From contig NC_043014.1 in NCBI RefSeq assembly GCF_006345805.1, positions 30,008,001 through 30,072,000 of the forward strand: a stretch of 64,000 nucleotides of DNA, read 5' to 3'. The stretch is from Octopus sinensis. Its lineage: Eukaryota. Both the position numbers and the translations under genes were made by a program. Shown here piece after piece: positions 7,050 to 63,367 of this stretch. The notes beneath the pieces were generated by a model. It was not told where the DNA came from. It worked only from the letters and a program-made list of their open reading frames with translations, and did no database searches. Positions within the stretch are counted from its first letter, which is position 1, and each line of letters opens with the position of its first letter.

Positions 7050-8900
7050 AGTTTGTTTACAGGATGGGCTTGAGGCTTTCCCTGTCTTCATATCCTTCGT
7101 CTATTCGGATTGCTGGTTCTTCTGTTGGATCAACATTAGGCAGACTCTCTTTCTCCCATGAGTTCTCTACATATAGTAGCCTTTCATAATTGCATTTCTG
7201 AGCCTCTTTCTTTGCAGAGTCACTAACTGCAAGTGAACCATCATCCATGCAAACACACTTCTCTCCCACATCACAATTTTTCTTGGCAAACCAAAACACT
7301 TCAACATTGGCAAACTTCTTATTTTCTGCTTCACCTCTGGCTAAGTATTACCTAGTGGAGGCACATGGCCTAGTGGTTAGAGTAGTGAACTCGTGGTCGA
7401 GGGATCATGGGTTCAAATCTCAGACCGGGTGGTGTGTGTGTTTATGAGTGAAACACCTAAGCTCCACACAACTCCAGCAGAAGGTAATGGCGAACTTCTG
7501 CTGACTCTTTCGCCACAACTTTTTCCCACTCTTTCCTCCTGCATCTTGCAGCTTACCTATGACAGACCGGCGTCCCGTCCAGGTGGGAAACCTATACGCC
7601 AAGGAAACCAGGAAACCAGCCCTTATGAGCCGGGCATGGCTTGAGAAGGAACAAACAAATATTACCTGCTTCTTAGCTTCCATTCTAGCTGCCTGATACA
7701 GCTACTTCCAGTTCTTTCAAGTCTGTTTCTTTGCTCTAATGGCCTGTCAACTACATTGTTCCACTACCATGTCACCTTAGGTCTGGTTGGGACTTTGTAC
7801 AATCCACAAATTTGGTCTGTGGCCCTCAGTAAATTGTCTCTTAGGAACTTCCAGTTATTCTCTATATTGCAACTCTGTGACCCCTTCTTCTCATCAAATG
7901 CTTCAGTTAGGAGTCCCTAAACCTCTGACTTTTCAAAGGATCCTTAAGCTTTCAGATAATTTTTTTCCAAACTGGCTTGCTTCTTGGAATCATTTGTGCC
8001 TGCAGTTTGAAGTCACTAATAAGTAACCTATGCTGGGGGTACAATCTTCACCAGAGAAAGACTTCGCATTCAAGAGCAACCATGAATCCCTTTTTCTGGT
8101 GAGAATGTAGTCGATCTGGTTAGTAGGGTCACCAGATTTATAGGTTATCAGGAGACTGGCTGGTTTATTGAAGTTGGTGTTGCATATCATTAGGTCATAT
8201 CACAGAACTCCAGCAACCTTGTTCCCTCCTCATTTTGAGAGACAATTCCATGGCCACCATGTATCCCCAGGAAGACACCTGAGTGCTGCCCAACATGCCC
8301 ATTGACATCACCATCCATGAAGATGAGGTCACTGTCACTTGTCTTCAATGTAGCTTGCAAAAGTGTCGTAAAAACAGTCCTTTCGTTAATTTGGCAAGCC
8401 TGGTTGTGGGGCTGAGGCAGAGATGATTGTTGCTGTGTTATTCTGCAAAATCGTCTGGGCGTAAGGTCACATACTCTGACTACCTCAATCCCCATACTTA
8501 ACTATTTCTCTGCTAGAAGTATATCAACACCTCCCACCCTGTTACAGTTGCCCTCCCAAAAGAGCGTATAACTATGCCTTTTGCTTGGCTGAAGCTCCCC
8601 TCCAACGAACTTCTTGGATGCAGCACACATCAACATGTCTCCTTCCAAGCATCTCAACAATCTCACCGGACCTACCTTTCAATGTGACTACTTTGACAAT
8701 ACCAACTCTGAGGGAATGTAAAGGGAGGCAAGAGGTAACATGGAGAGGGGGAACTGCGAATTTTGGCATCTGAAAAGAAGATTGTGATGAGCATCGGCCA
8801 ACAGACATGTAATAGCAGTTGTCCTTGCATTATTCCACCTTCAATTATGCTATCCTTGCCACTTCCTCTGGATGTGGGTGTAATACTAGCATTAGTATAA
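7050..8900 (-). mobile_element. RTE-clade LINE remnant: APE endonuclease and linker, degenerate
   Basis: Translated pieces LKGRSGEIVEMLGRRHVDVCCIQEVRWRG, GDVNGHVG...NEEGTRLLEFCD, ICNTNF...QIDYILTRK and YERLLYVENSWEKESLP are RTE ORF motifs. Frameshifted and interrupted by the SINE at 7354. Confidence 0.9.
7354..7659 (+). mobile_element. tRNA-derived SINE with V-domain-like 3' part, inserted in the RTE
   Basis: Head gtggaggcacatggcctagtggttagag...gggttcaaatctc, motif gaccggcgtcccgtccagg, tail aacaaacaaa. Exact 8-bp TSD tattacct at 7346-7353 and 7660-7667. Confidence 0.9.
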
Positions 8901-12548: not shown

Positions 12549-12917
12549 ACCCCCACCACAACTTCTTTTTCCTTTTTCTCATTGGAAAATGAGGTGAAAA
12601 AGGTAGCAGTATAACAATAGTAGTCATTCATAGATCCTCTTCAATCAAGAAGGGTCATATCCTAACACTAAGAGTTAGGAAGTGGAGTACAATACTATTA
12701 GTATGTTTATTAATCCTATGAACACTACATAACTTAATAACTGCACTTTTAAAATTTATAAGTTTAAATTATTTAAATAATTTTTTGAATTTTAACTTTT
12801 ATATTTTTAAATGTATTTTATGTATTGGCTTATGTTTTTCACTGTTTGATTTGCCTAATAGTGGTTTTATCTCTAATTTAATATAATATAATATTATATA
12901 TATATATATATATATAT

Positions 12918-13324
12918 CATCATCATCATCATCATCATTTAGCGTCCGTTTTCCATGCTAGCATGGGTTGGACGGTTCAACTGGGGTCTGTGAAGCTGGA
13001 AGGCTTCATCAGGCCCAATCAGATCTGGCAGTGTTTCTACGGCTGGATGCCCTTCCTAACGCCAACCACTCCGTGAGTGTAGTGGGTGCTTTTTATGTGC
13101 CACCCGCTCAGGTGCCAGACAGAGCTGGCAAACGGCCACGAACGGATGGTGCTTTTACGTGTCACCGGCACGGGGGCCAGGCGAGGCTGGCAACGGACAT
13201 GAACGGATGGTGCTTTTACGTGCCACCAACACAGGGGCCAGACTGAGCTGGCAAACGGCCACGAAATTGATGGTGCTTTTACGTGTCACCGGCACGGGGG
13301 CCAGGCGAGGCTGGCAACGGACAC

Positions 13325-13327
<3 letters not shown>
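12918..13327 (-). mobile_element. RTE-family 3' region with ~59-bp internal subrepeats and (ATG)n tail
   Basis: catcatcat tail, ttagcgtccgttttccatgctagcatgggttggacgg, and four gcttttacgtg..accggcac...ggcaa(a)cgg units. Flanked on both sides by (TA)n. Confidence 0.88.
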
Positions 13328-13358
<31 letters not shown>

Positions 13359-13366
<8 letters not shown>

Positions 13367-13583
13367 AAAGGGCTTAGTAAAATAAATTACTTTGCCGCAT
13401 ACTGAACTCGTTAGAAATAGCAGCTAAAAAAACTATTTCTAACACTTAAAGAAAACCTCTCTCATATGTATGAGATATGAGAGAGGTTTTCTTTAAGTGT
13501 TAGAAATAGTTTTTTTAGCTGCTATTTCTAACGAGTTCAGTATGCGGCAAAGTAATTTATTTTACTAAGCCCTTTTATATAAT
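13359..13583. mobile_element. perfect palindromic MITE / foldback element
   Basis: Arms 13359-13467 and 13475-13583 are exact reverse complements (109 bp) around the loop gtatgag. Confidence 0.85.
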
Positions 13584-18149: not shown

Positions 18150-18930
18150 CAGGTTCACATAGTTGAAGAAATGCCATGAGCAAACCCACTCCCTTTACAT
18201 AACTTTTATAGACTTAACCAAAGCCTTCAATACCATTAGCTGTGATGTTTTGTGGGAAATCCTGACAAAATTTGGCTACCCACCAAATTTTCTTGCCATT
18301 CTGAAGGACTTCCACAATAGAATGATCACCAAAGCCATCTATAATGGCGCCCAGTCTGACTTCTTCCCAGTTCAAGTCGGTGTCAAGCAAGGATGCATCT
18401 TCAACTTCTACATGGCAGCCATAGCCCGCCACACCAGGTATTCATTCAAGCTAAAAGATGCAATAACTGCCAGATGGCAGTATTTTCAATCTGAGGTCCC
18501 TGAAATCAGTAACAAAGATGTCACCTCAATACATCTTTGAGTTGCAATATGCAGATGATATGGCACTTGTCAGCCATAGCTCTGCTAGCCTTCAAAGGTT
18601 CTTGGACCACATGTCAGATGCATACAGCCATGCTGGCCTAGTCCATCAATACCAAGAAGACGGAAATTCCCCGACAATCTATGCTCTTTCCATGTTGAAG
18701 ATGCGACAGTTGCTAATGTTAACAAATTCACGTACCTTGACACAGTCCTCAATAACACCCTCAATCTGACAGACGATATTCAGCGCCGTATTCGTCTTGC
18801 CTCTGCCACATTTGGTCAGATAAGTACTTGTGTCCTTCTCAACAAAAACATCAATATCAGAACAAGAGTGGCTGTCTACAATGCTGTTTGTGTCACAATC
18901 CTGTTATATGGTTGTGAGTTTTGGGTACTA
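18150..18930 (+). mobile_element. RTE (BovB-like) reverse transcriptase fragment
   Basis: FIDLTKAFNTI...LWEILTKFGYP...GVKQGC, LQYADDMALV, FTYL...DIQRRIRLASATFG, ILLYGCEFW. Frameshifted. Confidence 0.9.
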
Positions 18931-27811: not shown

Positions 27812-28105
27812 GTGGAGGCGCAATGGCCTAGTGGTTAGGGCAGCGGACTTGCGGTCACGGTTTCGATTCCCAGACAGAGCGTTGTGAGTGTTTATTGAGC
27901 GAAAACACCTAAAAGCTCCACGATGCAGGGGGTGGTGATCCCTGCTGTACTCTTTCACCACTCTTTCTCCAACTCTTTCTTCTGTTGGCCTGCTCGCTTA
28001 GCCAGCGGGGTGGCGTCATTCGAAGGCTAAAACAATGCGAAGCGCATTGTGACCAGCGATGTGTAACAACATCTGATGGTCTGGCTGGTCACATGATCGA
28101 CGTGA
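27812..28105 (+). mobile_element. tRNA-derived SINE sharing its head with the 7354 SINE but with a different tail
   Basis: gtggaggcgcaatggcctagtggttagggcag...gcgaaaacacctaaaagctccac, then an unrelated 3' half (ccagcggggtggcgtcattcgaagg). Sits in (TA)n. Confidence 0.8.
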
Positions 28106-28133
28106 TATATATATATATATATATATATGTATA

Positions 28134-39152: not shown

Positions 39153-40046
39153 TGTATGTATGTATGTATGTATGTACAAGGGATAAAAGAATGAAATATG
39201 TAAACAACGGGAAACATTTTTTTTTAAAAGAAGGGAGAGAGAAAAACACGTCCGTTCTTTTAAATATCCATGCAGGAAATGAATGATGGTCACATGAGGA
39301 AAATAAAGATGGATGATGGTCATGTGAGCAATGAGAGAGAGAGAAAGAGAAAAGGAGAAAGAGGGGAGAGAGAGAGGAGAGAGGGGAGAAAGGAAAGAGG
39401 AAGAAAACAGTATACAGTAGAGAGGCGCATCAAAAAGATGAAGATAAACTTACTTGGAAATGGATGTGCCACGTTCAATTAAATGATAAATAATAGTCTC
39501 TCTCACTTTCTCCCATCTTTCTCTTTCTCTCTCTCTCTCATTGCTCACGTGTGACCATCGTCCATCTTTCTTTTCTTGCATGGATGTTTAAAAGAACGGA
39601 TGTGTTTTTCTCTCTCCCTTCTATCTTTTCTCTTTTCAAAAAAAATATTTCTCCCAATATTCACTATTTTCCTCTTGTACTGGTCTAACAACCCTCCATG
39701 TTTGTTTGCATTTGGTTTCCTCGTATGTCTCCACTGTCATTTTTTTGTTCCTAACTTTGACCCTCCATAAATCCTAAATTTTAGTTTAGAATTTATAGGA
39801 GCAACTGTCTTTGAAAATTCATATTGTCCTTGAATGCTTGAAATGAGAAGTAGATAGACAGCCAACAACTGATGAAGGGTCTTTTCTCTGTGTTTACTTC
39901 TCCTGTTTCCTATTTTTCCGTTGTTTACGCATTCCATGTTATTTGAACCGTTGGTGATGTCCTGTACCCATATATGCATGTATATATATATGCATGTATA
40001 TATATATGCATGTATATATATATATTATATATATATATATATATAT

Positions 40047-40240
40047 GTGGCACGTAAAAAGCACCCAGTACACTCTCGGAGTGGTTGGCGTTAGGAAGGG
40101 CATCCAGCTGCAGAAACTTTGCCAGATAAGACCGGAGCCTGGTGCAGCCTCCTGGCTTCCCAGATCCTCGGTCGAACCGTCCAACCCATGCTAGCATGGA
40201 GAACGGACGTTAAACGATGATGATGATGATGATGATGATG
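40047..40240 (+). mobile_element. RTE-family 3' tail with (GAT)n
   Basis: gtggcacgtaaaaagcacc...ctagcatggagaacggacgttaaacgatgatgat. Flanked by (TA)n on both sides. Confidence 0.9.
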
Positions 40241-40333
40241 ATATATATATATAATATTTATTATTCATTATTTAATTAAACGTGACACATCCATTTCCAA
40301 GTAAGTATGTATGTGTGTATACCTATACATATA

Positions 40334-42029
<1,696 letters not shown>

Positions 42030-44499: not shown

Positions 44500-47120
44500 T
44501 TTTCCTTATTCAGGCAGTATTTGGTTAGTGTCTTTCTGTGGATTGTTGAGACAGTAGTTCTGGTGTGCAATTATTTTTTTGTTCAGTTTTAGCTGATATT
44601 TTTGAATAAAATATTTTTCCTTGGCCTTATGAATATGTTCGTCTTCTGTCCACAATTTGAAGATAGGGAATATTTTAAATTTTCTTTTTCCTTTTTTTTC
44701 AAAATATTTGCTACAGGTTCTTTTTCTAATGGAGGGGTCATGGATCACTTGTTTGTGTATCCTTACTTTCTCATATAGTCTACATTTCAACAATGTAGTA
44801 TTCCTTGCTACATTGTTTTTTTTATGTTGGGTGCTTGCAGTCTGCTATAAATTATTTTGGAGTTTGTTATTAATCGGTTCATTCTTGATTAAGGCTGAAG
44901 GATTGGGAGGTATCATTTTGCAGTGTTGATGATGTGATTTCATGGGTTGTGGGTGATGACAAAAGGAATGCCTATGAGTTCATTTTTATATATATTTTTT
45001 GTGTGTTTCTTTTCCTCTGAGGGTTGTGGTTGGGATGATTTTTGCTTTGGTGATTGCTGTATCAGTTAAACTAGTGGGATATTTTTGTTCCTTTAGAAAT
45101 ATTTTTAATCCCTGTAATCTTGTGTCTCTTAATTCTGCATCTATTATCATCGTGCAAATTATTTTTGCCATATTAAAGGGTATCCTTTTGGTATATGAGG
45201 GATGGGAGGAATGAAATTTCAAATGTTGGTGTGTGTCTGTAGCTTTGTAGAAGAGATCTGTTTTTATAGTGTTATTTTCTTTAATTAGAAGTAAGTCCAA
45301 AAATGGTAATTCCTTTGTGTTTTGTTCCATGGCGAATTTTACTGAAGTGTGTAAGTTGTTTAAAAGTGAGTTAAATATTCTTAAGTCTTCTTAGTTTTGG
45401 GTCCAGAATATAAAGTAATCATCTAAATATTGTTTCCAATTGTTTTTTTTAGATATAAATGGAGAATTGTTCATTAACTGTTTCCGTTAGTTGGGAATAA
45501 AGTTTGACCTCTAAGAACCTCATAATGAGTGTTGCATATGTAGGGGATGCTTTTGTCCCCATTGCTGTTCCTTTTATTTGCAAGTAGAAGTTGTTATCGA
45601 AGAAGTGATTATTTTCCAGTATTAATTTTAATCCTTCTAAAATGAAGATTTTTGAGAATCTTTCCATGATATGGTTCGGGTGTTTTGTTAACCAGAAGTT
45701 TATAGCTTCAATTCCTACATCATGTGAGATGTTGGTGTATAGACTAGTTACATCGAAACCAACTAGAATTGTATCCTGGTAAACACTTTTAGGTATGTAG
45801 TTTAAAAAGTCCATATTGTCCTGGACAAAACTTGGTATCATTTTGCATAAAGGTTTTAGAACTTTATCTGTCAAGTTGCTTAAGTGTTGTGTACTGGATG
45901 ATGGTCCTGCAGTGATTGGGCCTAGTTTCAGGTCTCTAGGTTTCAGAATTTGGCATATGTTGAATTGTTTCTTTTATGTTGTCTTGGATTTCTTTTGATT
46001 TGTAGATTTTGGGTAATCCATAGAAGATACTGGTTTTGACTTCGAAATTGGTTAAATAATTAACCTCATTTTAAGTTAGGTTATCACGATATTTTGAGAC
46101 CAGTCTATGTATCTTGCACATGATATTTCTATCATCGTTTTGGTTTAGATTCTTGTAGCAGAAGTGGTGGTTATTGAGTTGTTCCATAAGTATATCTTTG
46201 TAATGGTTCTTGTCCATGACAACTATTGCTCCACCTTAGTCAGCTTCTTTGAAAATTATCGAAGAATCTTTTTTTAACGCTTCCAATTGATCTTTAGATA
46301 TGTTGGATTTACATTTCCTCTCTGTCATAGTAGGTTGAGTTGATCATCGTAGGAGGCTAGTATATTCTTCTAAATGTTTGTCTCTATTTGAGGAGAGTCT
46401 GAATCCTGTTCTCTTTTTGACCAGTGATTCATCTGTGTGTTCAGTATTTAGAAAGAATTCTTTCAAAAGTAAATTTTGGCAAAATTCTTCTGTGACTTTT
46501 ATAAGTTCAGCTTGGTTGGGTTTTGGAGTGGGTGTAAATTTCAGTCCATTTTCCAGGAATTTAATTTCTTCTTTAGATAATTTCTTAGTGCATAAATTTA
46601 TTATTTTCAGTTTGCTTATGTGCTTGTTTTCTAATGTTTTGGGAAGACTGGTGTTATTTTTTTCTTTTTTGGTGGAATATCTCATCTTAAAAAATGGTTT
46701 CTGTTGGAGTTGGGAGTGTTTATGTGGTAATTTTGCATTTTCTGTATGTGAATATTTGCGGTTGGTTATTCGTGGGTAAATAGGTTCTTACTTGTTGGAT
46801 TGGGGGGTTGAATCATTATTTTAATGTTGTTCCATCTGGTTTGTTTGGGTCTATGATTTGGTGTTGGAACAGTTCTATTTGTTCTTTGGTTGGGATTGTA
46901 AGTCCTCTTATTTCTTGTTACATCTGCATATGATTGTAAATTTGTGTTTCTTAGTCTGTTTTGTGGGAAAATTTCCTTTCTTTTAGTGGTGTTTTGAGGT
47001 CTTAATGGTTGGTGTTTAGGTTTTATCTGGTTTTTACCATAGTTGGTAAACCACAGAATTTCAGTTTGAAAATGGCTATCAAAAAGCTTGAAACTTATTA
47101 GAGTAACTGTAAATGTTATC
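44500..47120 (-). mobile_element. near full-length decayed Penelope-like element (N-terminal region, RT, GIY-YIG)
   Basis: IINLCTKKLSKEE...GLKFTPTPK; KEADxGGAIVVMD; FDVTSLYTNI...GTAMGT; YLDDY; LPFLD...KATDTHQHL..HSSHP; IPFVITHNP; CSKEYYIVE...VRIHKQ...KEKYFIQKYQLKLN. Multiple stops and frameshifts, and an apparent linker deletion. Confidence 0.92.
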
Positions 47121-47220
47121 ATTGAAATAAAAATGATTGCCCCAAAAGCCATCTTTACTCATTTTTTCAAATATATATATATATATATATATACATATCT
47201 ATCTATCTATCTATCTATCT

Positions 47221-53169: not shown

Positions 53170-55960
53170 TGGTTTTAGGATATGAAGTGCTGTGGTGGAC
53201 AGGTCTTCTGGAGTACAGCAAGGTGCCAAATATCTCGGTCTTTTGCAATCTTCTTTGTAAGACTCATCATCTTGAGATCAACCTTGAATATTTCATCCCA
53301 TGTTTCCTGGGTCTCCTCCTTCCACAGGTTCCATTCACTTTAGATGATCAGTACTTCTTTATGCAACAGTCCTCATCCATATGCATCACATGACCAAACC
53401 AGCACTAATTCCTCTTACATCTAATTTTTCTTTCTATACATTAGTGCTTTGTTGCACATATACACATGTCCACTGACATTGCACATCCAGCAGAGCATAC
53501 TTACTTCATTTCTCTCTAGTCTTCACAGTTTCTCTGCATTTAGTGTGCATATCTCACTACTATGTAGCATTGCTGTTCATATACATGCATCATACAATCT
53601 TCCTTTCATGCAGAGAGAGAGAGAGAAACCCTTGGATTCCAACAAAAGTAAAAGTTCACTGAATTTTTTCTATCCTCTTTTTATTCTAGAAATTACACAT
53701 TCTGTACATCCTCACTCCTGATTAAATTCCTTAGATAGCAAAAATTATCCACTAGCTCTAGAGAGCCTCCAAAGCATTTGAGAAAATCAATGTACCTTGT
53801 ATCAGTAGACTTTGTGGCTCCTGTATTTCTTCCACATACGAACACTACTTTATCCATTAATCTTCCTATTATTCCATTGCACTTCTTGTGTGTCCATAGC
53901 TTACATTGCATACACTGTGTGGAATTCCTGCATACACCTTTCTTACATATCAAGCAGGGTCATTTATGTAAAGAATATAGGGTCCTGTCTGTTTTCTTGC
54001 TTACTAGAACCTTGGTTTTTGCTAAGTTAACCTCAAAACCCTTTCATTCCAGGTTTCGCTTCCTTGTCTGGAATTTCTTTTCTAGTTCTGTTACAGATTC
54101 TACTATGAGAGTAAGATCATCAGCATATAGCAGTTCACATGGCAACTGGTCTTGAATTCTTCTGTTATGGCCTGGAGGACAATTATGAATAGGAGGGAAC
54201 TGAGAACTGAGAACTGAAATCTGATGAATGCCCACTTGTACACTAAATTCATCACTATATTCATGGTTAACTCCTACTTTACTTAGACAGAAACCTCTCT
54301 ATATGGCCTGTACAGCTTTCACAAGACATTATCTATCCCTAGCTTCCTCAGAGCCCATCATATCACAGAGTGAGGTACACTGTCAAAGACTTTCTCCAAG
54401 TCAACAAACACTAGGTACAATGGTTTATTCTTAGCCAAATACCTCTCTAAGAGTTGTTTGACTAAAAAGATAGCATCAGTAGTGCTTTTCCCTAACACAA
54501 AACCAAACTGCACTTTATCTGATCTGGGTTTATTTCTTTATTAATTGAGATATAACACTTTCCATAACTGTCATGACCTGGTCTAGTAATTTGATGCCTT
54601 TAATTGCCATAGCTGACTATAATGCTGCTAAACCAGTAATTGGGGATGACATCTTCCTGAGTAACCTGATTAACTATACAGGTGACCAACTTATGTCCTA
54701 CTCTGTCAGATATTTTAAGCATCTCAGCAGTAACTTCCAATGACCAAGGGCTTTCCCTGTTTTCATATCTTTAATAGTCTTATCTATCATACTGCTCTCA
54801 CCTCGAATAGCTGGTCCCTCTGTTAGGTTCACATGGGAGAGGCTCTCTTTCTCCCTTCATTCTCCATATTTAATATCCTTTCATAGTAGCACTTCCTCAC
54901 CTCTTCCTTTTCAGAGTCACTAAATGCAAGCGTACCATTATCCATCCATACACATTCCTCTCCCACAACATCTCTATTCTCTCTGATACACTGTCTAGCA
55001 TACCAGAGCACTTCAAGTCTTAGATCTTCACACTGTAAGACATTGACAAACCTCTTCCTTTCTGCTTCTACTCTTGCTAGATAAACCTGTTGCCTAGTTT
55101 TCCTCTTAGATACTTGATATAGCTCTTTGCTACCTCCATTTCCCCAGTTTTCCAAGCCTGTCTCTTTATTCTTATGGTCCTATCTACCTCATTTTTCCAC
55201 CACCATGTTACTTTCTGGCAAAGACTTTGCCTCACCTACAGATTTTGTCTGTAGCCTTCAGAACATTGTCTTATAAGAGCTTCTGGTTGTCCTCTACATT
55301 ATATGTCGCTAGCTCCTCCTCTTTCTCATCGAATGCTTTAATCAGAATGTCTCTAAATCTCTGACTGTTTGATGGATCTTTGAGTTTCCATAATTTTCTT
55401 TTCCAAACTCGTTTGTATCTCTGCGTCCACCTAGCCCTAAGTCTGAAGTCATTAACCACTAACTCACTAACTTATGCTGAGTCATACATTCCTCACTGGG
55501 AAAGGACTTGGAATTTACAAACATCTGTCTATCCTTGTTTCTGGTGACAATATAGTTAATCTGGCTTGAGTACCTATCAGATTGATGAGTAATTAGGTGG
55601 CTGGTTGACTTCTTGAAGTTAGTGTTGCAGACCAGCAAGTCATTTGCATCACAGAACTTCAGGAGACTTGTTCCCGCCTCACTTCTAGTGCCAAAGCTGA
55701 AGCCTCCATACACGCCATAATAAAGTCATTGTCCTTCATTGTCAAGGTAGTGTCCAGAAGGGCCTAATAGTTCTGTCCATCTACTAGTACAGCATGTAGA
55801 GCATATACAGAGATAAATGTTATTGTTACATTATACAAGATTATTCTTAACTTGATTATCCTATCACAAACCCAGCAAACATCTGCATTTCTCCACTCAA
55901 GCATTTCAACAATCTCACTAAACCTACCTTTCATGGTACCAACATTGATCGTAGTTGTTC
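53170..55960 (-). mobile_element. decayed RTE-clade LINE ORF (APE, RT, Cys-rich finger, C-terminus)
   Basis: INVGTMKGRFSEIVEML; GTSLLKFCDANDLLVCNTNFKK; ELLYADDL; CKKGVCRNSTQCMQCKLWTHKKC...FVCGR; WFGHVMHMDEDC...GRRRPRK. Many lesions and deletions. Confidence 0.92.
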
Positions 55961-56147: not shown

Positions 56148-57407
56148 CAAGGGTGAGTCAAAAAGTAATGCCATTTTCTTTATTTCATGTGATTATATCA
56201 TTTATGTTCTGAAATATTTTATTTCTTACTTTTCAGGTTTTTAGACTGGTAAGGACAAAGACCAGTAGAGCAGTGATTGAATTTCTTGTTGCTGAGGGGG
56301 CAAACACCTGTGAACATTCACCAATGATTACAAAATGTCTTTGCAGGCAATACTTTAGATTATTGCAATGTATGCAGGTGGGTCCATCGTCTGAAAGATG
56401 AAAATGTGGGAACTGTAAGTGTAGCCAATAAACTCCGTTCTGGCCGGCCGTCTTCTTCTGTGAATCCTGCCAATAAAGCAAAAGCAGATGCTCTGATCAG
56501 AGAAGACAGGTGCATAACTCTTGATGAGTTGGCTGAAAACTTTGAAGTGAGTCACGGAAGTGCTTACAACATTGTCAAATCACTTGGCTTTTCAAAAGTG
56601 TGTGCTCGTTGGGTACTGAGAGAGCTGACTACCGAACACAAGACTGACAGGGTCAATGCCTGCACTGAACTTCTCGAACAAAGTCAAAGAGACAACACCT
56701 TCTTTTGAAGGCTCGTAACAGGTGATGAATCATGGATTTATTATTATGAACCAGAATCAAAGAGGCAGTCAGTGGAATGGCGCCACTCTATGTCACCACC
56801 ACCGAAAATGTTCAAGATGCAAATCAGCTGGAAAAATCATGGCAACTATCTTTTGAGATGCTCAAAGTGTCATTCTAGTCAATTTCTTGCCAAAAGGAAA
56901 AACAATAAACTCTGAGGCCTACGTTGAGACCCTGACGAGGTTCAGAGCAAGACTCCAACGAGTAAGACCCAACTTACCAATTGACAATGTCCTCCTTCTG
57001 CATGACAATGCTTGACCACACACAAGCATCAGGACAAAGGAGACAATCGCCTCATTCAGGTGGACAACTTTACTGCATCCTCCATACTCACCAGATTTAG
57101 CACCTTCAGACTATCATCTCTTCGGCCCCATGAAAGAAGGTTTGAGAGGCAAACATTATTCCAGTGACAATGAAGTGAAAACTGTAGTGAAGAAGTGGTT
57201 CAAAGAACAGTCAACAGAATTTTACAGGGCAGGGATATATACTCTCATTCAAAGGTAGAACATTGCTATTGAAAGAAATGGTGACTATGTTGAGAAGTAG
57301 AGATGTGATCCACAGAGGACCAGCTTTATTTTGATGTATGATACATGTTCCTGTGTTGGTAATTATACCTGTCCTAAACAAAATGGCATTACTTTTTACT
57401 CACCATC

Positions 57408-58770: not shown

Positions 58771-59486
58771 TGTATATATATATGTATATGTAAAAAACAC
58801 AAACTGGGACAAGAATGCAAAACATTTAGAAGACGATACAAAATACACAGACAGGACATTCGAAGCCTCCAATCTTCAGTCAAGAACCGGATCATCCTCG
58901 CAATTTCGGCTGATTAATCTTGAGATTGCTCCGACCTGGCCAGCCCCAAAGGAAAATCTAAGCCAAGCACATTAGATTCCTTGGAAGAAAGCCTCGAATG
59001 TATACAAAACAAGGACAGGAACAAATAAGAATACAAAAATACGTAAAAATAATAATGATAACATGAGTAAGAATACGAAAATACGTAAAAACAATAATGA
59101 TAATAATAATAACAAAAACAGGACGTCACAGACAGGCGTCTTTTCAACAGTACAGGTGAACTTGAGCTGACACATTGGAAAAATACCTTGAGGCGAAGAG
59201 AGAAAAAAAATGTGTCTAGCCTAGACGGCTGCTGACCACGAAAAGGCAGGATAGCAGTCCAAAGTTAGTCACGTGTGAGGAGAAGAGAGAGGAGAAAAGA
59301 GGGACAGAGGAAGAGAGAAAAAAGGGAACAAGGAACAAAGGAGGAGGAGAAGAGAGAGAGAGAGAGAGAAAGAGACAGATCAAAGTGGAGTGTAACGTGT
59401 GAAAGGCAGAGAAATGTAGGAGATGGGGGAGAGAGAAAGACAGTATTATAGAGTTGTACCATGTTTATATATATATATATATATAT

Positions 59487-60208
59487 ATCATCATCATCAT
59501 CATCATCATCGTTTAGGGTCCGCTTTCCATGCTAGCATGGGTTGCACGGTTCAACTGGGGCCTGGGAAGCCAGAAGGCTGCATCAGGCCCAGTCTGATCT
59601 GGCAATGTTTCTATGGCTGGATGCCCTTCCTAACACCAACCACTCCGTGAGTGTAGTGGGTGCTTTTTATGTGCCACCAGCACAGGTGCCAGACAAGGCT
59701 GGCAAACGGCCACGATCGAATGGTACTTTTTACATGCCACCGGCACAGAGGCCAGGCAAGGCTGGCAATGGCCACGATTGGATGGTGCTTTTTACGTGCC
59801 ACCGGCAAAGAGGCCAGTTGGGGTTGGCAATGGTCACATCCGGATGGTTCTCTTACATGCCACCGGCACTGATATCACAGCTACAATTTCCATTGATGTT
59901 GATCGATTTCAATTTTGATTTTCACTTGCCTCAACAGGTCTTCGCAAGTAGAGTTTTGTGTCCCAAGAAGGAAAGGTATGCATAAGTGGACTGGCTACAT
60001 CCCAGATAGAGGCCACGGGTTAAGGTTGACGAGGCAAATACCGATAGGGCACAGAAAGTGTGTCAATAGCCAACTGGAGAAGATGTTCTCCTGGGGCTAC
60101 AAGCTACAGTAACATCCACCCTTAGTGGTTAGCCATATTTAGATGGCAAATATACTTCACATTGTCGTGCAGTTACTGTCTATACCTCGTTCAGGGATTT
60201 ATTATTGC
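59487..60208 (-). mobile_element. longest RTE-family non-coding element (~720 bp) with four ~59-bp subrepeats and (ATG)n tail
   Basis: Same tail subfamily as the U6-fused sequence; no ORF; (TA)n on both sides. Confidence 0.85.
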
Positions 60209-61069: not shown

Positions 61070-61596
61070 TATTATTAATACATATGTCAAGAGGTGAACA
61101 AAAAGAACAAAGCCAAGAGAAAAATTAGACGAAAGTACAACAAACAAAAAAAAACAACAAAAATGCAACAAACAGAAAACTAGACAAAACATATGTGTGT
61201 ACATATATATGGTGTTTCAAAAGCATTGACATCATTTGAAATGTGAATATCTGAGTATCTACATGTCCAAGGCAAACAAAATTAAATAGACTTCATATTG
61301 AAAACATAAAAAATTTATTTATCAAAATTTGAACAAGAGATTCAGAGGGATGTAAATTTTATAACTGATTCACAAATGTTCAATATGCACACCACCTGTG
61401 ACACGACACATGTCAAATTAGTAGTCCAGCTCCTGTCAACCACACTGTAGCTTGTCTTGCTTAACATTCCCCAGTGCCTCAGTGATTATCTGCTTGAGTT
61501 CCTCTAGGTTTGTAAGAAGAGTGTGAGGCATATAGACCAGTTCTTTCACATAACCCCATAGAAAAAATCATCAGATGAATGTGGTGGCCATTTCAA

Positions 61597-61693
61597 GGCA
61601 GTACATATACTAAAATTGGAGCGATACAGAGAAGATTAGCATGGCCCCTGCACAAGGATGACATGCAAATTCGTGAAGTGTTCCATATTTTTT
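61597..61693 (+). pseudogene. U6: U6 snRNA retrocopy (U6 nt ~12 to the 3' U-tract), 5' part of a U6/RTE chimera
   Basis: ggcagtacatatactaaaattggagcgatacagagaagattagcatggcccctgcacaaggatgacatgcaaattcgtgaagtgttccatatttttt. Contains ACAGAGA, AGC and the ISL. About 5 changes from the canonical metazoan U6, 3 at CpG. Upstream is transposase sequence, with no PSE or TATA. Confidence 0.95.
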
Positions 61694-61964
61694 GGCCGTT
61701 GCCAGCATCGCCTGGCCCCCGTGCCAGTGGCACATAAAAAGCACCATCTGGTCGTGGCCGTTTGCCAACCTCGTCTGGCACCTGTGCCGGTGGCACGTAA
61801 AAAGCACCCACTACACTCATGGAGAGGTTGGCGTTAGGAAGGGCATCCAGCCGTAGAAACATTGCCAGATCAGACTGGGCCTGGTGCAGCCTTCTGGCTT
61901 CCCAGACCCCAGTTGAACCGTCCAACCCATGCTAGCATGGAAAGCAGACGCTAAACGATGATGA
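61694..61964 (+). mobile_element. RTE-family 3' ~270 nt fused directly behind U6
   Basis: Begins mid-subrepeat (ggccgttgccagc) immediately after the U6 T-run and ends ggaaagcagacgctaaacgatgatga. Confidence 0.92.
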
Positions 61965-63367
61965 ATGTCATTATCACTGACATGCTTTAGCCATCTCTCT
62001 TGTGAGATAAGCTTGCAAAGTTAGCTTCCAGTGAGATGGAGCCCCATCCTGTTGAAAAATGAAGCATTTATGTTTATTTGCAATGAGCTCATCAAATAAC
62101 CATTTTTGATGCATTTGCAAATAAACACAACCAGTCACATTTCTCTCAAAGAAAAATGGTCCATAAAGATGATTCTTGGAGATTGTACAGAACACATTCA
62201 CTTTCAATGAATTCCTTATGTGCATCAGGATTTTCTTCCTCACAAATACAAACATTATACTTACTGACTTAGCCATTCATATGAAATGTGGCCTCATCAC
62301 TGAAAACAAGATACTTTTCAAACTCCTTATCTTCAAGTTTTTCTTGTATAGTGACATAGAATTGCATGCACTTTTCCTTGTCATTGGTATTTAAGGCTTG
62401 AATGAGCTGCAGCTTATAGAGTGTCATTTGCAAGCATTTCCTTACTACACACCAAAGTGTTGGGATCTTTTCGGTTTGAATGGCAGTTTTTAACATAATT
62501 TCCAGGGAGCTAAAAAATTTTAAACTTCGTATACTGGTAGAATGTGTTTATAAAACATCATTTTCTCTTGCCTTTCTTGAGAAAATTCTATAGTTTGTAA
62601 CATATTTTGTCTTTAATTTCTTGCATTTTGGCAATTTTAACCAATCGCTGACCGTCCATTGAGGTGAAAGCATTCTGTGCGTCATCAATATGTCCCTCCT
62701 TTAAGAAACAGATTGGGTTTATTTACATTTGTGAAGAAAAAAAGATACCCTTCCCCCACCCTTAACCCTAACTAACCCTAAATCTAAAATAGATTGAAAT
62801 GCAATAGATGATACTCGGGTCATAATTATGGGTGACAATTTCATATGACACTGCTAGAAAAATCTTATTATAATAATGAGAAGCGCTTAGAAATGTTGTC
62901 AACTGAGAATAGTGAAAAGACACACAAATATTATAAATTAAATTTCAAAGAAACTCTTAGCTATAAAATATTTTCTCATTAAGTTTTTAGTAAGGGTAGA
63001 ATTTACTTATTTTTAAGTTCAAATAGATATCTAAAAAATTAGCTGTACTGTGATTGGTATCAACAGTTATTCTTAAAATATATAACTAAAAAGTTATGTG
63101 AGGTTTTTGTAAATCTGTTTAATTCGTGGCCACTCGTACTGTATTATTAATAACCCATCATCTCTGTAAAGCCTTCTTTTCAATGTATGGAAGTTGTTAG
63201 ATAAATAGTCTTGCATAATCATATGTCTTCACAGAAACATCTAATCATTTCAAGAGGTAATATTTATCCCCACTGAAACTTGGATGTTCTGTTAGTACAA
63301 ACTTTACTGCTGTAGATACCATGAGAGAAACTTTCATATTGGCTTTTGGTGTAAAAATTACTGTTGT

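What the first reader, a model, noticed from the sequence alone, without database searches (positions are those of the whole stretch)
61597..61964. U6 snRNA / RTE-LINE chimeric retrocopy inserted inside a DNA transposase
Seen: a near full-length U6 ending exactly at its U-tract (TTTTTT, 61688-61693) is joined in the same orientation, with no spacer, to the last ~270 nt of the RTE-family element. The whole unit splits a maT-like transposase between FQQDGAP and LKWPP. Removing it restores ...gac att cat gcc ttg aaa tgg... (DIHALKW) on the minus strand, so there is essentially no TSD. There is GGCA microhomology at the U6 5' junction (which would explain the missing first ~11 nt) and ATGA microhomology with the tail. 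Known: U6/L1 chimeras in mammals arise by RtcB ligation of U6's 2',3'-cyclic-phosphate end to LINE RNA or by template switching; I also recall reports of U6 fused to RTE or L2 in some vertebrates. Inference: the same U6-capture pathway operates in a cephalopod through an RTE enzyme. I know of no description in molluscs.
Basis: partly seen in the sequence, partly recalled or inferred. Interest (0 to 1): 0.85.

Follow-up and report, generated by a model that had tools for sequence, protein, structure and literature searches.

The report
U6–RTE chimeric retrocopy in octopus
A dead copy of the spliceosomal U6 RNA is fused directly to the tail end of an octopus RTE-type jumping gene and sits inside an older, decayed DNA transposon. 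This kind of retrocopy is already known from lizard, opossum and platypus and is seen here in a cephalopod.

Summary
The core observation is real. Window 61597-61693 is a 5'-truncated U6 copy (Rfam 101 bits) ending in TTTTTT. It abuts, with no spacer and in the same orientation, the last 271 nt of a repeat ending in a short (GAT)n run. O. vulgaris copies place this repeat as the 3'UTR directly behind a LINE ORF end. The RTE clade is inferred, not tested. Both halves are about 5% decayed, mostly at CpG, so they are equally old. The unit splits a decayed Tc1/mariner-type (DDE_3) transposase. The maT label is not supported.

Four related transposons read GACAATGTGCTGTTGAAATGG at the site. On the + strand the target was therefore CCATTTCAA-CAGCACAT-TGTC. 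That 8-mer equals U6 nt 14-21, which is exactly where the U6 copy begins (p about 5e-4 to 3e-3). There is no target-site duplication. The 5' join was probably guided by this homology.

The best reading is a single old chimeric retrocopy made by the RTE enzyme. Template switch and prior RNA ligation cannot be told apart. Whether this is a recurrent pathway or a U6-headed SINE family could not be tested, because no octopus genome was searchable by DNA. It is a new member of a known kind, of modest interest.

The parts
61597..61693 (+). 5'-truncated U6 snRNA retrocopy (U6 nt 12-107 with a 5-6 nt U-tract). It begins in the UUCG tetraloop of the U6 5' stem-loop. It has no 5' end and no upstream promoter, so it is a pseudogene.
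   Evidence: Rfam U6 at 101 bits. BLAST to human U6 covers nt 12-107 at 94.8%. Three of the 5 mismatches are CpG transitions (reading).
61599..61606 (+). CAGTACAT, which is U6 nt 14-21 (CAGCACAT in human U6). The same 8-mer stood in the target at this very spot in the closest related transposons. Its origin, target or U6, is therefore ambiguous, and it is the probable 5' joining homology. The preceding GG (61597-61598) is U6 nt 12-13 and is absent from the target.
   Evidence: Homologue alignment. Chance estimates of 5e-4 to 3e-3.
61688..61693 (+). U6 terminal T-tract (TTTTTT). The last T (61693) could equally be the first base of the RTE part, a 1-nt overlap.
   Evidence: Sequence. BLAST of the tail begins at 61693 ('unit' query position 194).
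61694..61816 (+). Two ~61-nt tandem units of the LINE 3'UTR minisatellite. Other copies carry 3-6 or more units.
   Evidence: Self-match 61693-61745 against 61755-61808 at 85%. Comparison with copies at 59503-59870 and 12929-13326. TRF finds nothing at only 2 copies.
61817..61955 (+). Unique 3'-terminal part of the LINE 3'UTR, shared by all 5'-truncated copies.
   Evidence: Consensus built from 37 copies. This copy is 5.5% diverged over the whole 272 aligned positions of the tail.
61956..61964 (+). Short terminal microsatellite CGATGATGA, about 2.7 GAT repeats. Other copies carry 1-12 repeats. This is the site of reverse-transcription priming. The boundary with the target is uncertain by 1-2 nt.
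61211..61596 (-). 3' part of the host Tc1/mariner-type (DDE_3 family) transposon remnant, from LKWPPHSSD to its end (...GAAACACC).
   Evidence: Translation. 81% nt identity to L006 through to the element end. Protein alignment.
61965..62720 (-). 5' part of the same transposon remnant, with several frameshifts and stops, ending ...FQQDGAPSHW...ERWLKHVSDND. The upper boundary is approximate, and no terminal inverted repeat was found.
   Evidence: Homologues carry Pfam DDE_3, HTH_32 and DUF4817.
59496..60026 (-). Reference copy of the same LINE 3'UTR in the window. It has the unique region behind the stop codon, 4 tandem units, the tail and (GAT)8, and it is inserted in (TA)n.
12922..13327 (-). 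Another copy of the same 3'UTR, with 5-6 tandem units, the tail and (GAT)7, lying between (TA)n runs.

Best explanation
This is a single, old, dead chimeric retrocopy.

1. An RTE-type LINE enzyme nicked the bottom strand of a Tc1/mariner-type transposon near 5'-GACAAT^GTG.
2. It primed on the (GAU)n end of an RTE 3'UTR RNA.
3. It copied 271 nt of that RNA.
4. It then continued on U6 snRNA, starting at the natural U-tract end of U6.
5. The cDNA reached at least U6 nt 12.
6. The cDNA was attached to the upstream target DNA where the target sequence CAGCACAT is identical to U6 nt 14-21. Two unpaired U6 bases (GG) were kept, and there is no target-site duplication.
7. The unit has since decayed by about 5%.

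Shown: the anatomy, both junctions, equal decay of the two halves, the adjacency of the flanks in homologues, and the position of the tail behind a LINE ORF end.

Inferred: the enzyme clade (RTE), the order of events, the role of the homology patch, and the flap-trimming origin of the GG.

Undecided: whether U6 was joined by RT template switching or by prior RNA ligation (RtcB type). The sequence fits both; the overlap is a single T.
For: - U6 identity and extent.
- Direct U-tract-to-tail junction with a 1-nt overlap.
- The tail is a LINE 3'UTR. L001 10830-10015 (-) shows the ORF end ...GRPRKTWDEVVKHDLQTLGLTKEMTRDRDLWKYAVREKTRQD*, followed by ~190 nt, tandem units, the tail and (GAT)n. A second, older copy has the same ORF end (L003).
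- Thirty-seven alignable copies show varied 5' truncation points, a shared 3' end and (GAT)1-12.
- Equal age: the tail differs at 15 of 272 positions (5.5%) from the consensus, and U6 at 5 of 96 (5.2%) from human U6. Both are dominated by CpG transitions.
- One interruption: the flanks are contiguous in 4 homologous transposons, with only 7-8 nt (CAGCACA/T) unaccounted for.
- That 8-mer equals U6 nt 14-21. The chance of such a match is 5.5e-4 (8/8) or 4.5e-4 (11/13). If octopus U6 natively has T at nt 17, the figure is 2.8e-3 (10/13).
- Only 1 of ~47 tails in 166 kb has a U6, and there are no other small RNAs.
- Precedent: U6 chimeras with RTE and L2 and their SINEs, with 5'-truncated U6 and small or no TSD (PMC4476161).
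- O. vulgaris RTE-2_OV has a ~600-nt 3'UTR made mostly of repeats (PMC9115989).
Against: - The ancestral target is inferred from transposons that are only 72-81% identical and come from other, unknown hosts. Only the two homologues most similar at the protein level (L006, L008) read CAGCACAT. No same-genome paralogue or orthologous empty site was available.
- The extra GG is not predicted by simple annealing and needs an ad hoc flap-trimming or bulge step.
- The native octopus U6 sequence is unknown (C or T at nt 17).
- The RTE clade was not tested by RT phylogeny. A search with the ORF-end peptide found nothing.
- This is a single locus, and raw reads were not seen.
Confidence: 0.8

Rival explanations
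1. The unit is one member of an amplified U6-headed, RTE-tailed SINE family. A master copy would be transcribed and mobilised repeatedly, so the U6-tail junction would be inherited rather than made at this locus.
For: The O. vulgaris repeat annotation lists one 'SINE/U' family (369 kb, 19 recent insertions averaging ~730 bp) without describing it. An snRNA head plus a full RTE 3'UTR would be about that length. My searches could not have seen such a family, because octopus DNA is nearly absent from the searchable collections.
Against: U6 uses an upstream (external) Pol III promoter, which a retrocopy does not carry (established knowledge; PMC4494074). This copy also lacks U6 nt 1-11. 'SINE/U' normally denotes U1/U2 heads. 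Forty-six of 47 tails in 166 kb lack any head; by Kojima's criterion this fits sporadic template switching. The 5' end coincides with a homology in this particular target, which points to local formation of at least the 5' join.
Confidence: 0.1
2. Integration was endonuclease-independent. A U6-RTE cDNA or RNA was captured at a pre-existing double-strand break in the transposon and joined by microhomology at both ends. This is a variant of the main explanation for the integration step only.
For: There is no TSD, 7-8 nt of target are replaced or merged, and there is a homology patch at the 5' join. The target is not a (TA)n run, unlike about half of the window's copies.
Against: The 3' junction looks ordinary for this family: (GAT)n followed by AT or GAA, with 2-3 repeats seen in other copies too. 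Small or absent TSDs are usual for RTE and L2 insertions (PMC4476161).
Confidence: 0.12
3. There were two independent events: a U6 pseudogene, and later or earlier a 5'-truncated RTE tail that happened to land exactly at its U-tract.
For: Tail copies are dense, about 1 per 3.5 kb.
Against: From that density, the chance that a tail's 5' end falls within +/-1 nt of a given point in the same orientation is about 4e-4 (my estimate). A stringent LINE cannot mobilise a bare U6, and no poly(A) or second set of junction marks exists. The two halves have the same decay, and the flanks are contiguous in homologues.
Confidence: 0.03
4. A co-transcript from a source locus was retrotransposed as one RNA. 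In that locus an RTE tail would lie immediately downstream of a U6 gene, with read-through past the T-tract.
For: None directly. It would give the same product.
Against: It needs an RTE copy truncated exactly at the U6 terminator, with zero gene-flank nucleotides between them, and Pol III reading through six T's.
Confidence: 0.03
5. The structure is an assembly or chimeric-read artefact.
For: The region is repeat-rich.
Against: Both junctions show coherent biology, and both halves carry old mutations. Misassembly would not place a U6 end-to-end with a tail inside a collinear ORF.
Confidence: 0.02

Closest known systems
U6-RTE and U6-RTE-SINE chimeras of vertebrates (Anolis RTEX-2; opossum RTE_Mdo and RTESINE1), Doucet et al. 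2015, PMC4476161
   Same: U6 lies in sense orientation 5' of the 3' end of an RTE-clade element. In opossum the U6 is 5'-truncated and there is no obvious TSD. These were interpreted as template switching by a 'stringent' LINE.
   Different: The host is a mollusc and the RTE family is different, with a minisatellite 3'UTR and a (GAT)n end. Here the target could be reconstructed from related transposons, and it shows an 8-nt identity with U6 at the 5' join. I found no mention of microhomology in that paper.
U6-L2 / U6-Mon-1 chimeras of platypus (same paper)
   Same: Almost all have a 5'-truncated U6 upstream of a short LINE or SINE 3' piece that ends in a simple repeat. TSDs are 1-9 bp or absent.
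   Different: The LINE clade is L2, not RTE, and about 40 loci are known there against one here.
U6/L1 chimeric pseudogenes of mammals (Buzdin 2002; Garcia-Perez 2007; Moldovan 2019, PMC6789731)
   Same: U6 ends at its U-tract and is fused directly to a 5'-truncated LINE 3' end in the same orientation. RtcB ligation or template switching has been proposed.
   Different: In L1 chimeras the U6 is consistently full length, the insert ends in poly(A), and it has 7-20 bp TSDs. Here U6 lacks nt 1-11, the end is (GAT)n, and there is no TSD.
SINEU (snRNA-headed SINEs; Kojima 2015, PMC4494074)
   Same: An snRNA-derived 5' part is joined to a retrotransposon-derived 3' part. Template switching has been proposed for their birth.
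   Different: SINEU heads are U1/U2, and the families are multi-copy with shared junctions. Here the head is U6 and a single copy is known.

Membership tests
U6/LINE chimeric retrocopy | The U6 sequence is recognisable and lies in sense orientation 5' of the LINE part. | tested here: met
   Rfam 101 bits on the + strand. The tail is on the + strand.
U6/LINE chimeric retrocopy | U6 ends at its natural 3' U-tract and is fused directly, without gene-flank or spacer sequence. | tested here: met
   TTTTTT 61688-61693 is followed at once by GGCCGTTGCC of the tail, with a 1-nt overlap.
U6/LINE chimeric retrocopy | The LINE part is 5'-truncated and includes the element's very 3' end with its terminal repeat. 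| tested here: met
   271 nt reaching CGATGATGA, aligned end to end with 37 copies.
U6/LINE chimeric retrocopy | The whole unit is one insertion: one pair of junctions, with flanks adjacent in the empty site. | tested here: met
   The flanks are adjacent, apart from 7-8 nt, in 4 homologous transposons. The halves are equally decayed. A true empty allele was not available.
U6/L1-type chimera (mammalian) | Full-length U6, a poly(A) end and 7-20 bp TSDs. | tested here: not met
   U6 starts at nt 12, the end is (GAT)n, and there is no TSD.
RTE clade LINE (parent of the tail) | The RT/APE ORF groups with RTE in a phylogeny. | not tested
   Only the last 45 codons of the ORF were recovered. The peptide search found nothing, and no full-length copy lay in 102 kb of O. 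vulgaris sequence.
RTE clade LINE (parent of the tail) | The 3' end consists of a short simple repeat, with a repeat-rich 3'UTR and abundant 5'-truncated copies. | tested here: met
   (GAT)1-12 ends, 61-nt tandem units and varied truncation points. This matches the published description of O. vulgaris RTE-2_OV.
U6-headed SINE family | Many copies share the same head-tail junction at different loci. | tested here: inconclusive
   No second junction appeared in 166 kb, in two ORF-library searches or in one metagenome scan. A control shows that these collections hold almost no octopus DNA.
maT (DD37D) transposase (host element) | 37 residues between the 2nd and 3rd catalytic aspartates. | tested here: not met
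   There are 46 residues between the D of QQDGAP and the D of CDFFLWG in 9 homologues. The assignment of these motifs is by analogy, so the result is tentative.
Tc1/mariner superfamily (host element) | A DDE_3 transposase domain with N-terminal HTH. | tested here: met
   Homologues at 59-67% identity hit Pfam DDE_3, HTH_32 and DUF4817. The decayed window copy alone gives no Pfam hit.

The most novel reading that the evidence does not exclude
U6 capture by RTE enzymes is a recurrent pathway in cephalopods, with many independent U6-RTE-tail loci. It may have seeded a mobilised U6-headed SINE, possibly the undescribed 'SINE/U' of O. vulgaris. In addition, the 5' joins of such chimeras would be systematically guided by homology between the target and the U6 5' stem. 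That would give a sequence-level handle on how stringent LINEs finish integration.
Probability: 0.15. Interest if true: 0.55.

Novelty: new member of a known kind. Interest (0 to 1): 0.3.

Why it matters
The finding extends the taxonomic range of U6/LINE chimeras from vertebrates, and the analogous fungal cases, to a lophotrochozoan. That supports the view that template switching or RNA-end joining onto U6 is a general property of non-LTR retrotransposition.

The locus is also unusually readable. Because the target is itself a transposon with relatives, the pre-insertion sequence can be inferred, and it shows an 8-nt identity with U6 exactly at the 5' join. The same approach could be applied genome-wide to study how RTE elements complete integration.

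On its own it is one decayed locus with no functional consequence.

Tried and rejected
1. Full-length U6, as the Rfam alignment (model 1-105) suggests. Rejected: the first 13 nt encode the conserved LKWPP of the transposase, and their likeness to U6 nt 1-11 is chance (p = 0.15).
2. Rejected using four homologous transposons.
3. The 5' region of the 59.5-60.2 kb copy as a SINE head or ORF. It has no ORF, no tRNA, and homology to other copies starts only at 60026.
4. Finding other U6-tail junctions through spurious ORFs. The antisense ORF search returned only O. vulgaris tail ORFs and mammalian-like U6 antisense ORFs. The sense-frame search of 1.84 billion representatives returned 1297 U6 ORFs; none of the 13 hits I read carried the tail. 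Both are uninformative, because octopus is barely represented.
5. A metagenome scan for the junction pattern gave 0 hits. A control scan for the tail alone gave only 4 contigs, none with real homology, so the negative result means little.
6. Recovering a full RTE ORF. The 842-aa gene next to a tail in L004 is a repetitive host protein. L003 holds only another ORF-end fragment. The peptide search found nothing.
7. Terminal inverted repeats of the host transposon: none were found.
8. TRF on the two tandem units found nothing at 1.9 copies.
9. Literature searches for invertebrate U6-LINE chimeras found none.

Full report
WHAT IS THERE. Rfam finds a single RNA gene-like match in the 64-kb window: U6 at 61584-61692 (+), 101 bits, E 4.6e-25. 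BLAST against human U6 aligns only nt 12-107 to 61597-61692 (94.8%, 5 mismatches). The 13 nt that Rfam adds on the 5' side are the transposase codons for PP-W-K-L-A. Their resemblance to U6 nt 1-11 is no better than at 15% of other GGCA sites in the window. U6 is therefore truncated at about nt 12, inside the UUCG tetraloop of its 5' stem-loop. The copy ends in TTTTTT (61688-61693). Three of the five differences from human U6 are CpG-to-TpG/CpA changes. One (C to T at nt 17) may be native to octopus, since that stem position covaries between animals (own knowledge).

THE TAIL. From 61693/61694 to 61964 the sequence is a repeat with at least nine further copies in the window. It consists of two ~61-nt tandem units, a ~145-nt unique 3' part and CGATGATGA. 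Other copies carry 3-6 or more units and (GAT)1-12, and are 5'-truncated at many different points.

I used spurious antisense ORFs to reach O. vulgaris genomic DNA. One copy, L001 10830-10015 (-), shows the repeat directly behind an ORF end...GRGRPRKTWDEVVKHDLQTLGLTKEMTRDRDLWKYAVREKTRQD*. About 190 nt of unique 3'UTR follow, then the tandem units, the tail and (GAT)n. L003 holds a second, older copy with the same ORF end. The tail is therefore the 3'UTR of a LINE, or of a non-autonomous derivative that shares it.

That the LINE is of the RTE clade is likely but was not tested here.
- The ORF-end motif is, to my knowledge, typical of RTE/BovB.
- The simple-repeat terminus is an RTE trait.
- O. 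vulgaris RTE-2_OV is described with a ~600-nt 3'UTR made mostly of repeats (PMC9115989).
- RTE is the most abundant LINE class in O. vulgaris.
- Against this, I recovered no RT domain.

ONE EVENT OR TWO. A consensus of 37 copies puts the chimeric tail at 5.5% divergence (15 of 272 positions), mostly CpG transitions, among the younger copies. The U6 part is at 5.2% (4.2% if nt 17 is native). The junction has no spacer, and a single T could belong to either side. Tail density is about 1 per 3.5 kb, so an independent landing within +/-1 nt in the same orientation has a chance of about 4e-4 (my estimate). A 'stringent' LINE cannot mobilise U6 without its own tail (PMC4476161). The flanks are contiguous in related transposons (see below). 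One event is by far the simplest reading.

THE HOST ELEMENT. On the minus strand the flanks encode a decayed transposase...FQQDGAPSHW...ERWLKHVSDND | LKWPPHSSDDFFLWGYVK...GGVHIEHL. It is 59-67% identical to proteins that carry Pfam DDE_3, HTH_32 and DUF4817. The spacing between the putative second and third catalytic aspartates is 46 residues in nine homologues. The 'maT-like' (DD37D) label is therefore not supported, and 'Tc1/mariner-type' is the safe name.

THE TARGET SITE (MAIN CORRECTION). I fetched the DNA of four homologous transposons: L006, 81% identical over 870 nt up to the element's end; L008; L007; and L009.

At the site they read as follows.
- L006 and L008: GACAATGTGCTGTTGAAATGG.
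- L007: the same with ATG in place of CTG.
- L009: GACAGTGTGTTGCTGAAATGG.
The window has GACA|TTCAT...insert...GCC|TTGAAATGG.

Local identity in the flanks is about 87%. They are insert sequence, not target.

The ancestral + strand target was CCATTTCAA-CAGCACAT-TGTCATTATC. The window reads CCATTTCAA-GG-CAGTACAT-ATACTAAAAT...(U6)...(tail)...CGATGATGA-ATGTCATTATC.

Three points follow.
(i) There is no target-site duplication, at most a 2-nt AT.
(ii) The 8 nt of target 'missing' from the flanks are identical to U6 nt 14-21, which lie exactly where the U6 copy begins. Including the TTC upstream, target and U6 match at 11 of 13 positions.
(iii) The two G's between CAA and CAG are U6 nt 12-13 and do not occur in the target.

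Sampling random 20-nt sites from the window gives a chance of 5.5e-4 for an 8/8 match and 4.5e-4 for an 11/13 match. If octopus U6 has T at nt 17, the figures are 0.03 (7/8) and 2.8e-3 (10/13).

At the 3' side, the predicted junction GATGATG|ATTGTC differs from the observed GATGATGAATGTC by one substitution. That implies priming by an ...AT-3' end on the AU of the (GAU)n tail. Many other copies are likewise followed by AT... or (AT)n.

MOST LIKELY MECHANISM. This is target-primed reverse transcription by the RTE enzyme on an RTE 3'UTR RNA. After 271 nt, within the tandem units, synthesis continued on U6 from its 3' U-tract. Either the RT switched templates (a 1-nt A:U overlap is available), or U6 had already been ligated to a 5'-OH RTE RNA fragment, as shown for U6/L1 with RtcB (PMC6789731). 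The sequence cannot separate these two.

The cDNA reached at least nt 12. Its segment complementary to U6 nt 14-21 could pair with the top-strand CAGCACAT of the target. Trimming the unpaired 3' flap two bases short of the homology, then ligating to the resected bottom strand (TTGAAATGG), would give the observed CAA-GG-CAG... after replication. This last step is my inference and is the weakest part. The coincidence of truncation in the tetraloop is noted but not explained.

An endonuclease-independent capture at a break is a possible variant, but the 3' junction looks ordinary for the family.

COMPARISON WITH WHAT IS KNOWN. Doucet et al. 2015 (PMC4476161) report several related cases.
- Three U6-RTEX-2 chimeras in Anolis.
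- 5'-truncated U6 joined to RTE_Mdo and to RTESINE1 in opossum, without an obvious TSD.
- About 40 mostly 5'-truncated U6-L2/Mon-1 chimeras in platypus, with TSDs of 1-9 bp or none.
They conclude that template switching to U6 is general among LINE clades. The present locus has that anatomy.

It differs from mammalian U6/L1 chimeras, which have full-length U6, poly(A) and long TSDs. snRNA-headed SINEs (SINEU) have U1/U2 heads and are multi-copy. I found no report from molluscs or other invertebrates. The O. vulgaris repeat annotation lists an undescribed 'SINE/U' family.

WHAT COULD NOT BE DONE. No tool searches an octopus genome by DNA. Two ORF-library searches across the junction returned nothing relevant: the antisense frame and the sense frame. 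A metagenome scan for the junction pattern also returned nothing. A control shows that those collections hold almost no octopus sequence. In the 166 kb of octopus sequence in hand, 1 of ~47 tails carries a U6, and no other small RNA adjoins a tail. By Kojima's argument this favours a sporadic chimera over a SINE family, but it is a small sample.

VERDICT. This is a genuine U6-RTE-type chimeric retrocopy, old and inert, inside a dead Tc1/mariner-type transposon. It is a new member of a known kind, apparently the first noted in a mollusc. Interest is 0.3.

Noticed in passing
L005 3680-4596 (-) (O. vulgaris OX597840.1): The last ~123 nt of the RTE tail plus (GAT)5 GACGATA is repeated six times head to tail, with a period of ~137 nt. 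This is a small satellite array born from a retrotransposon tail.
   Followed up: no
window 59480-59503, 12880-12929, 13327-13360, 40000-40047, 40223-40250, 28100-28133: Copies of this RTE family in the window sit preferentially in (TA)n microsatellites, with (GAT)n directly followed by (AT)n and often (TA)n on the 5' side as well. This suggests a target preference, or that the element seeds or extends TA repeats.
   Followed up: partly
window 60026; L001 7531; L003 10508; L004 3234: Four of ~16 longer 3'UTR copies start within 33 nt of the ORF stop codon (positions 113-146 of the L001 reference). This may indicate a non-autonomous '3'UTR-only' subfamily or a preferred RT stop.
   Followed up: no
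window 13360-13560: A near-perfect ~90-nt inverted repeat (palindrome) lies immediately upstream of the 12922-13327 tail copy. Its arms read ...GGCTTAGTAAAATAAATTACTTTGCCGCATACTGAACTCGTTAGAAATAGCAGCTAAAAAAACTATTTCTAACACTTAAAGAAAACCTCTCTCATAT....
   Followed up: no
window 40412-41637 (-), 56406-56708 (+): Two further, different mariner-type transposase remnants with HTH-containing ORFs.
   Followed up: no
window 8190-8495 (-), 18163-18540 (+), 44986-47152 (-), 54829-55155 (-): ORF fragments of other LINE or retroelement copies (endonuclease- and RT-like). None is contiguous with the tail family studied here.
   Followed up: no
L006 (TARA ocean metagenome scaffold), L008 and L009 (marine metagenomes): The closest DNA relatives of the host transposon (81% nt identity over 870 nt for L006) come from marine metagenome contigs of unknown host. 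This means either animal DNA in those samples or horizontal spread of the transposon family.
   Followed up: no
L004 7027-7103: A mir-9/mir-79 precursor (Rfam 62 bits) in the O. vulgaris locus that was fetched for a tail copy.
   Followed up: no
P0175 (protein library hit, host unknown): An ORF that contains two U6 sense-frame translations, each followed by the same ~70-aa sequence (NNLKWPGHTFAILPVGKASRR...). It is either a tandem U6 gene array or a U6-headed repeat in some other organism.
   Followed up: no
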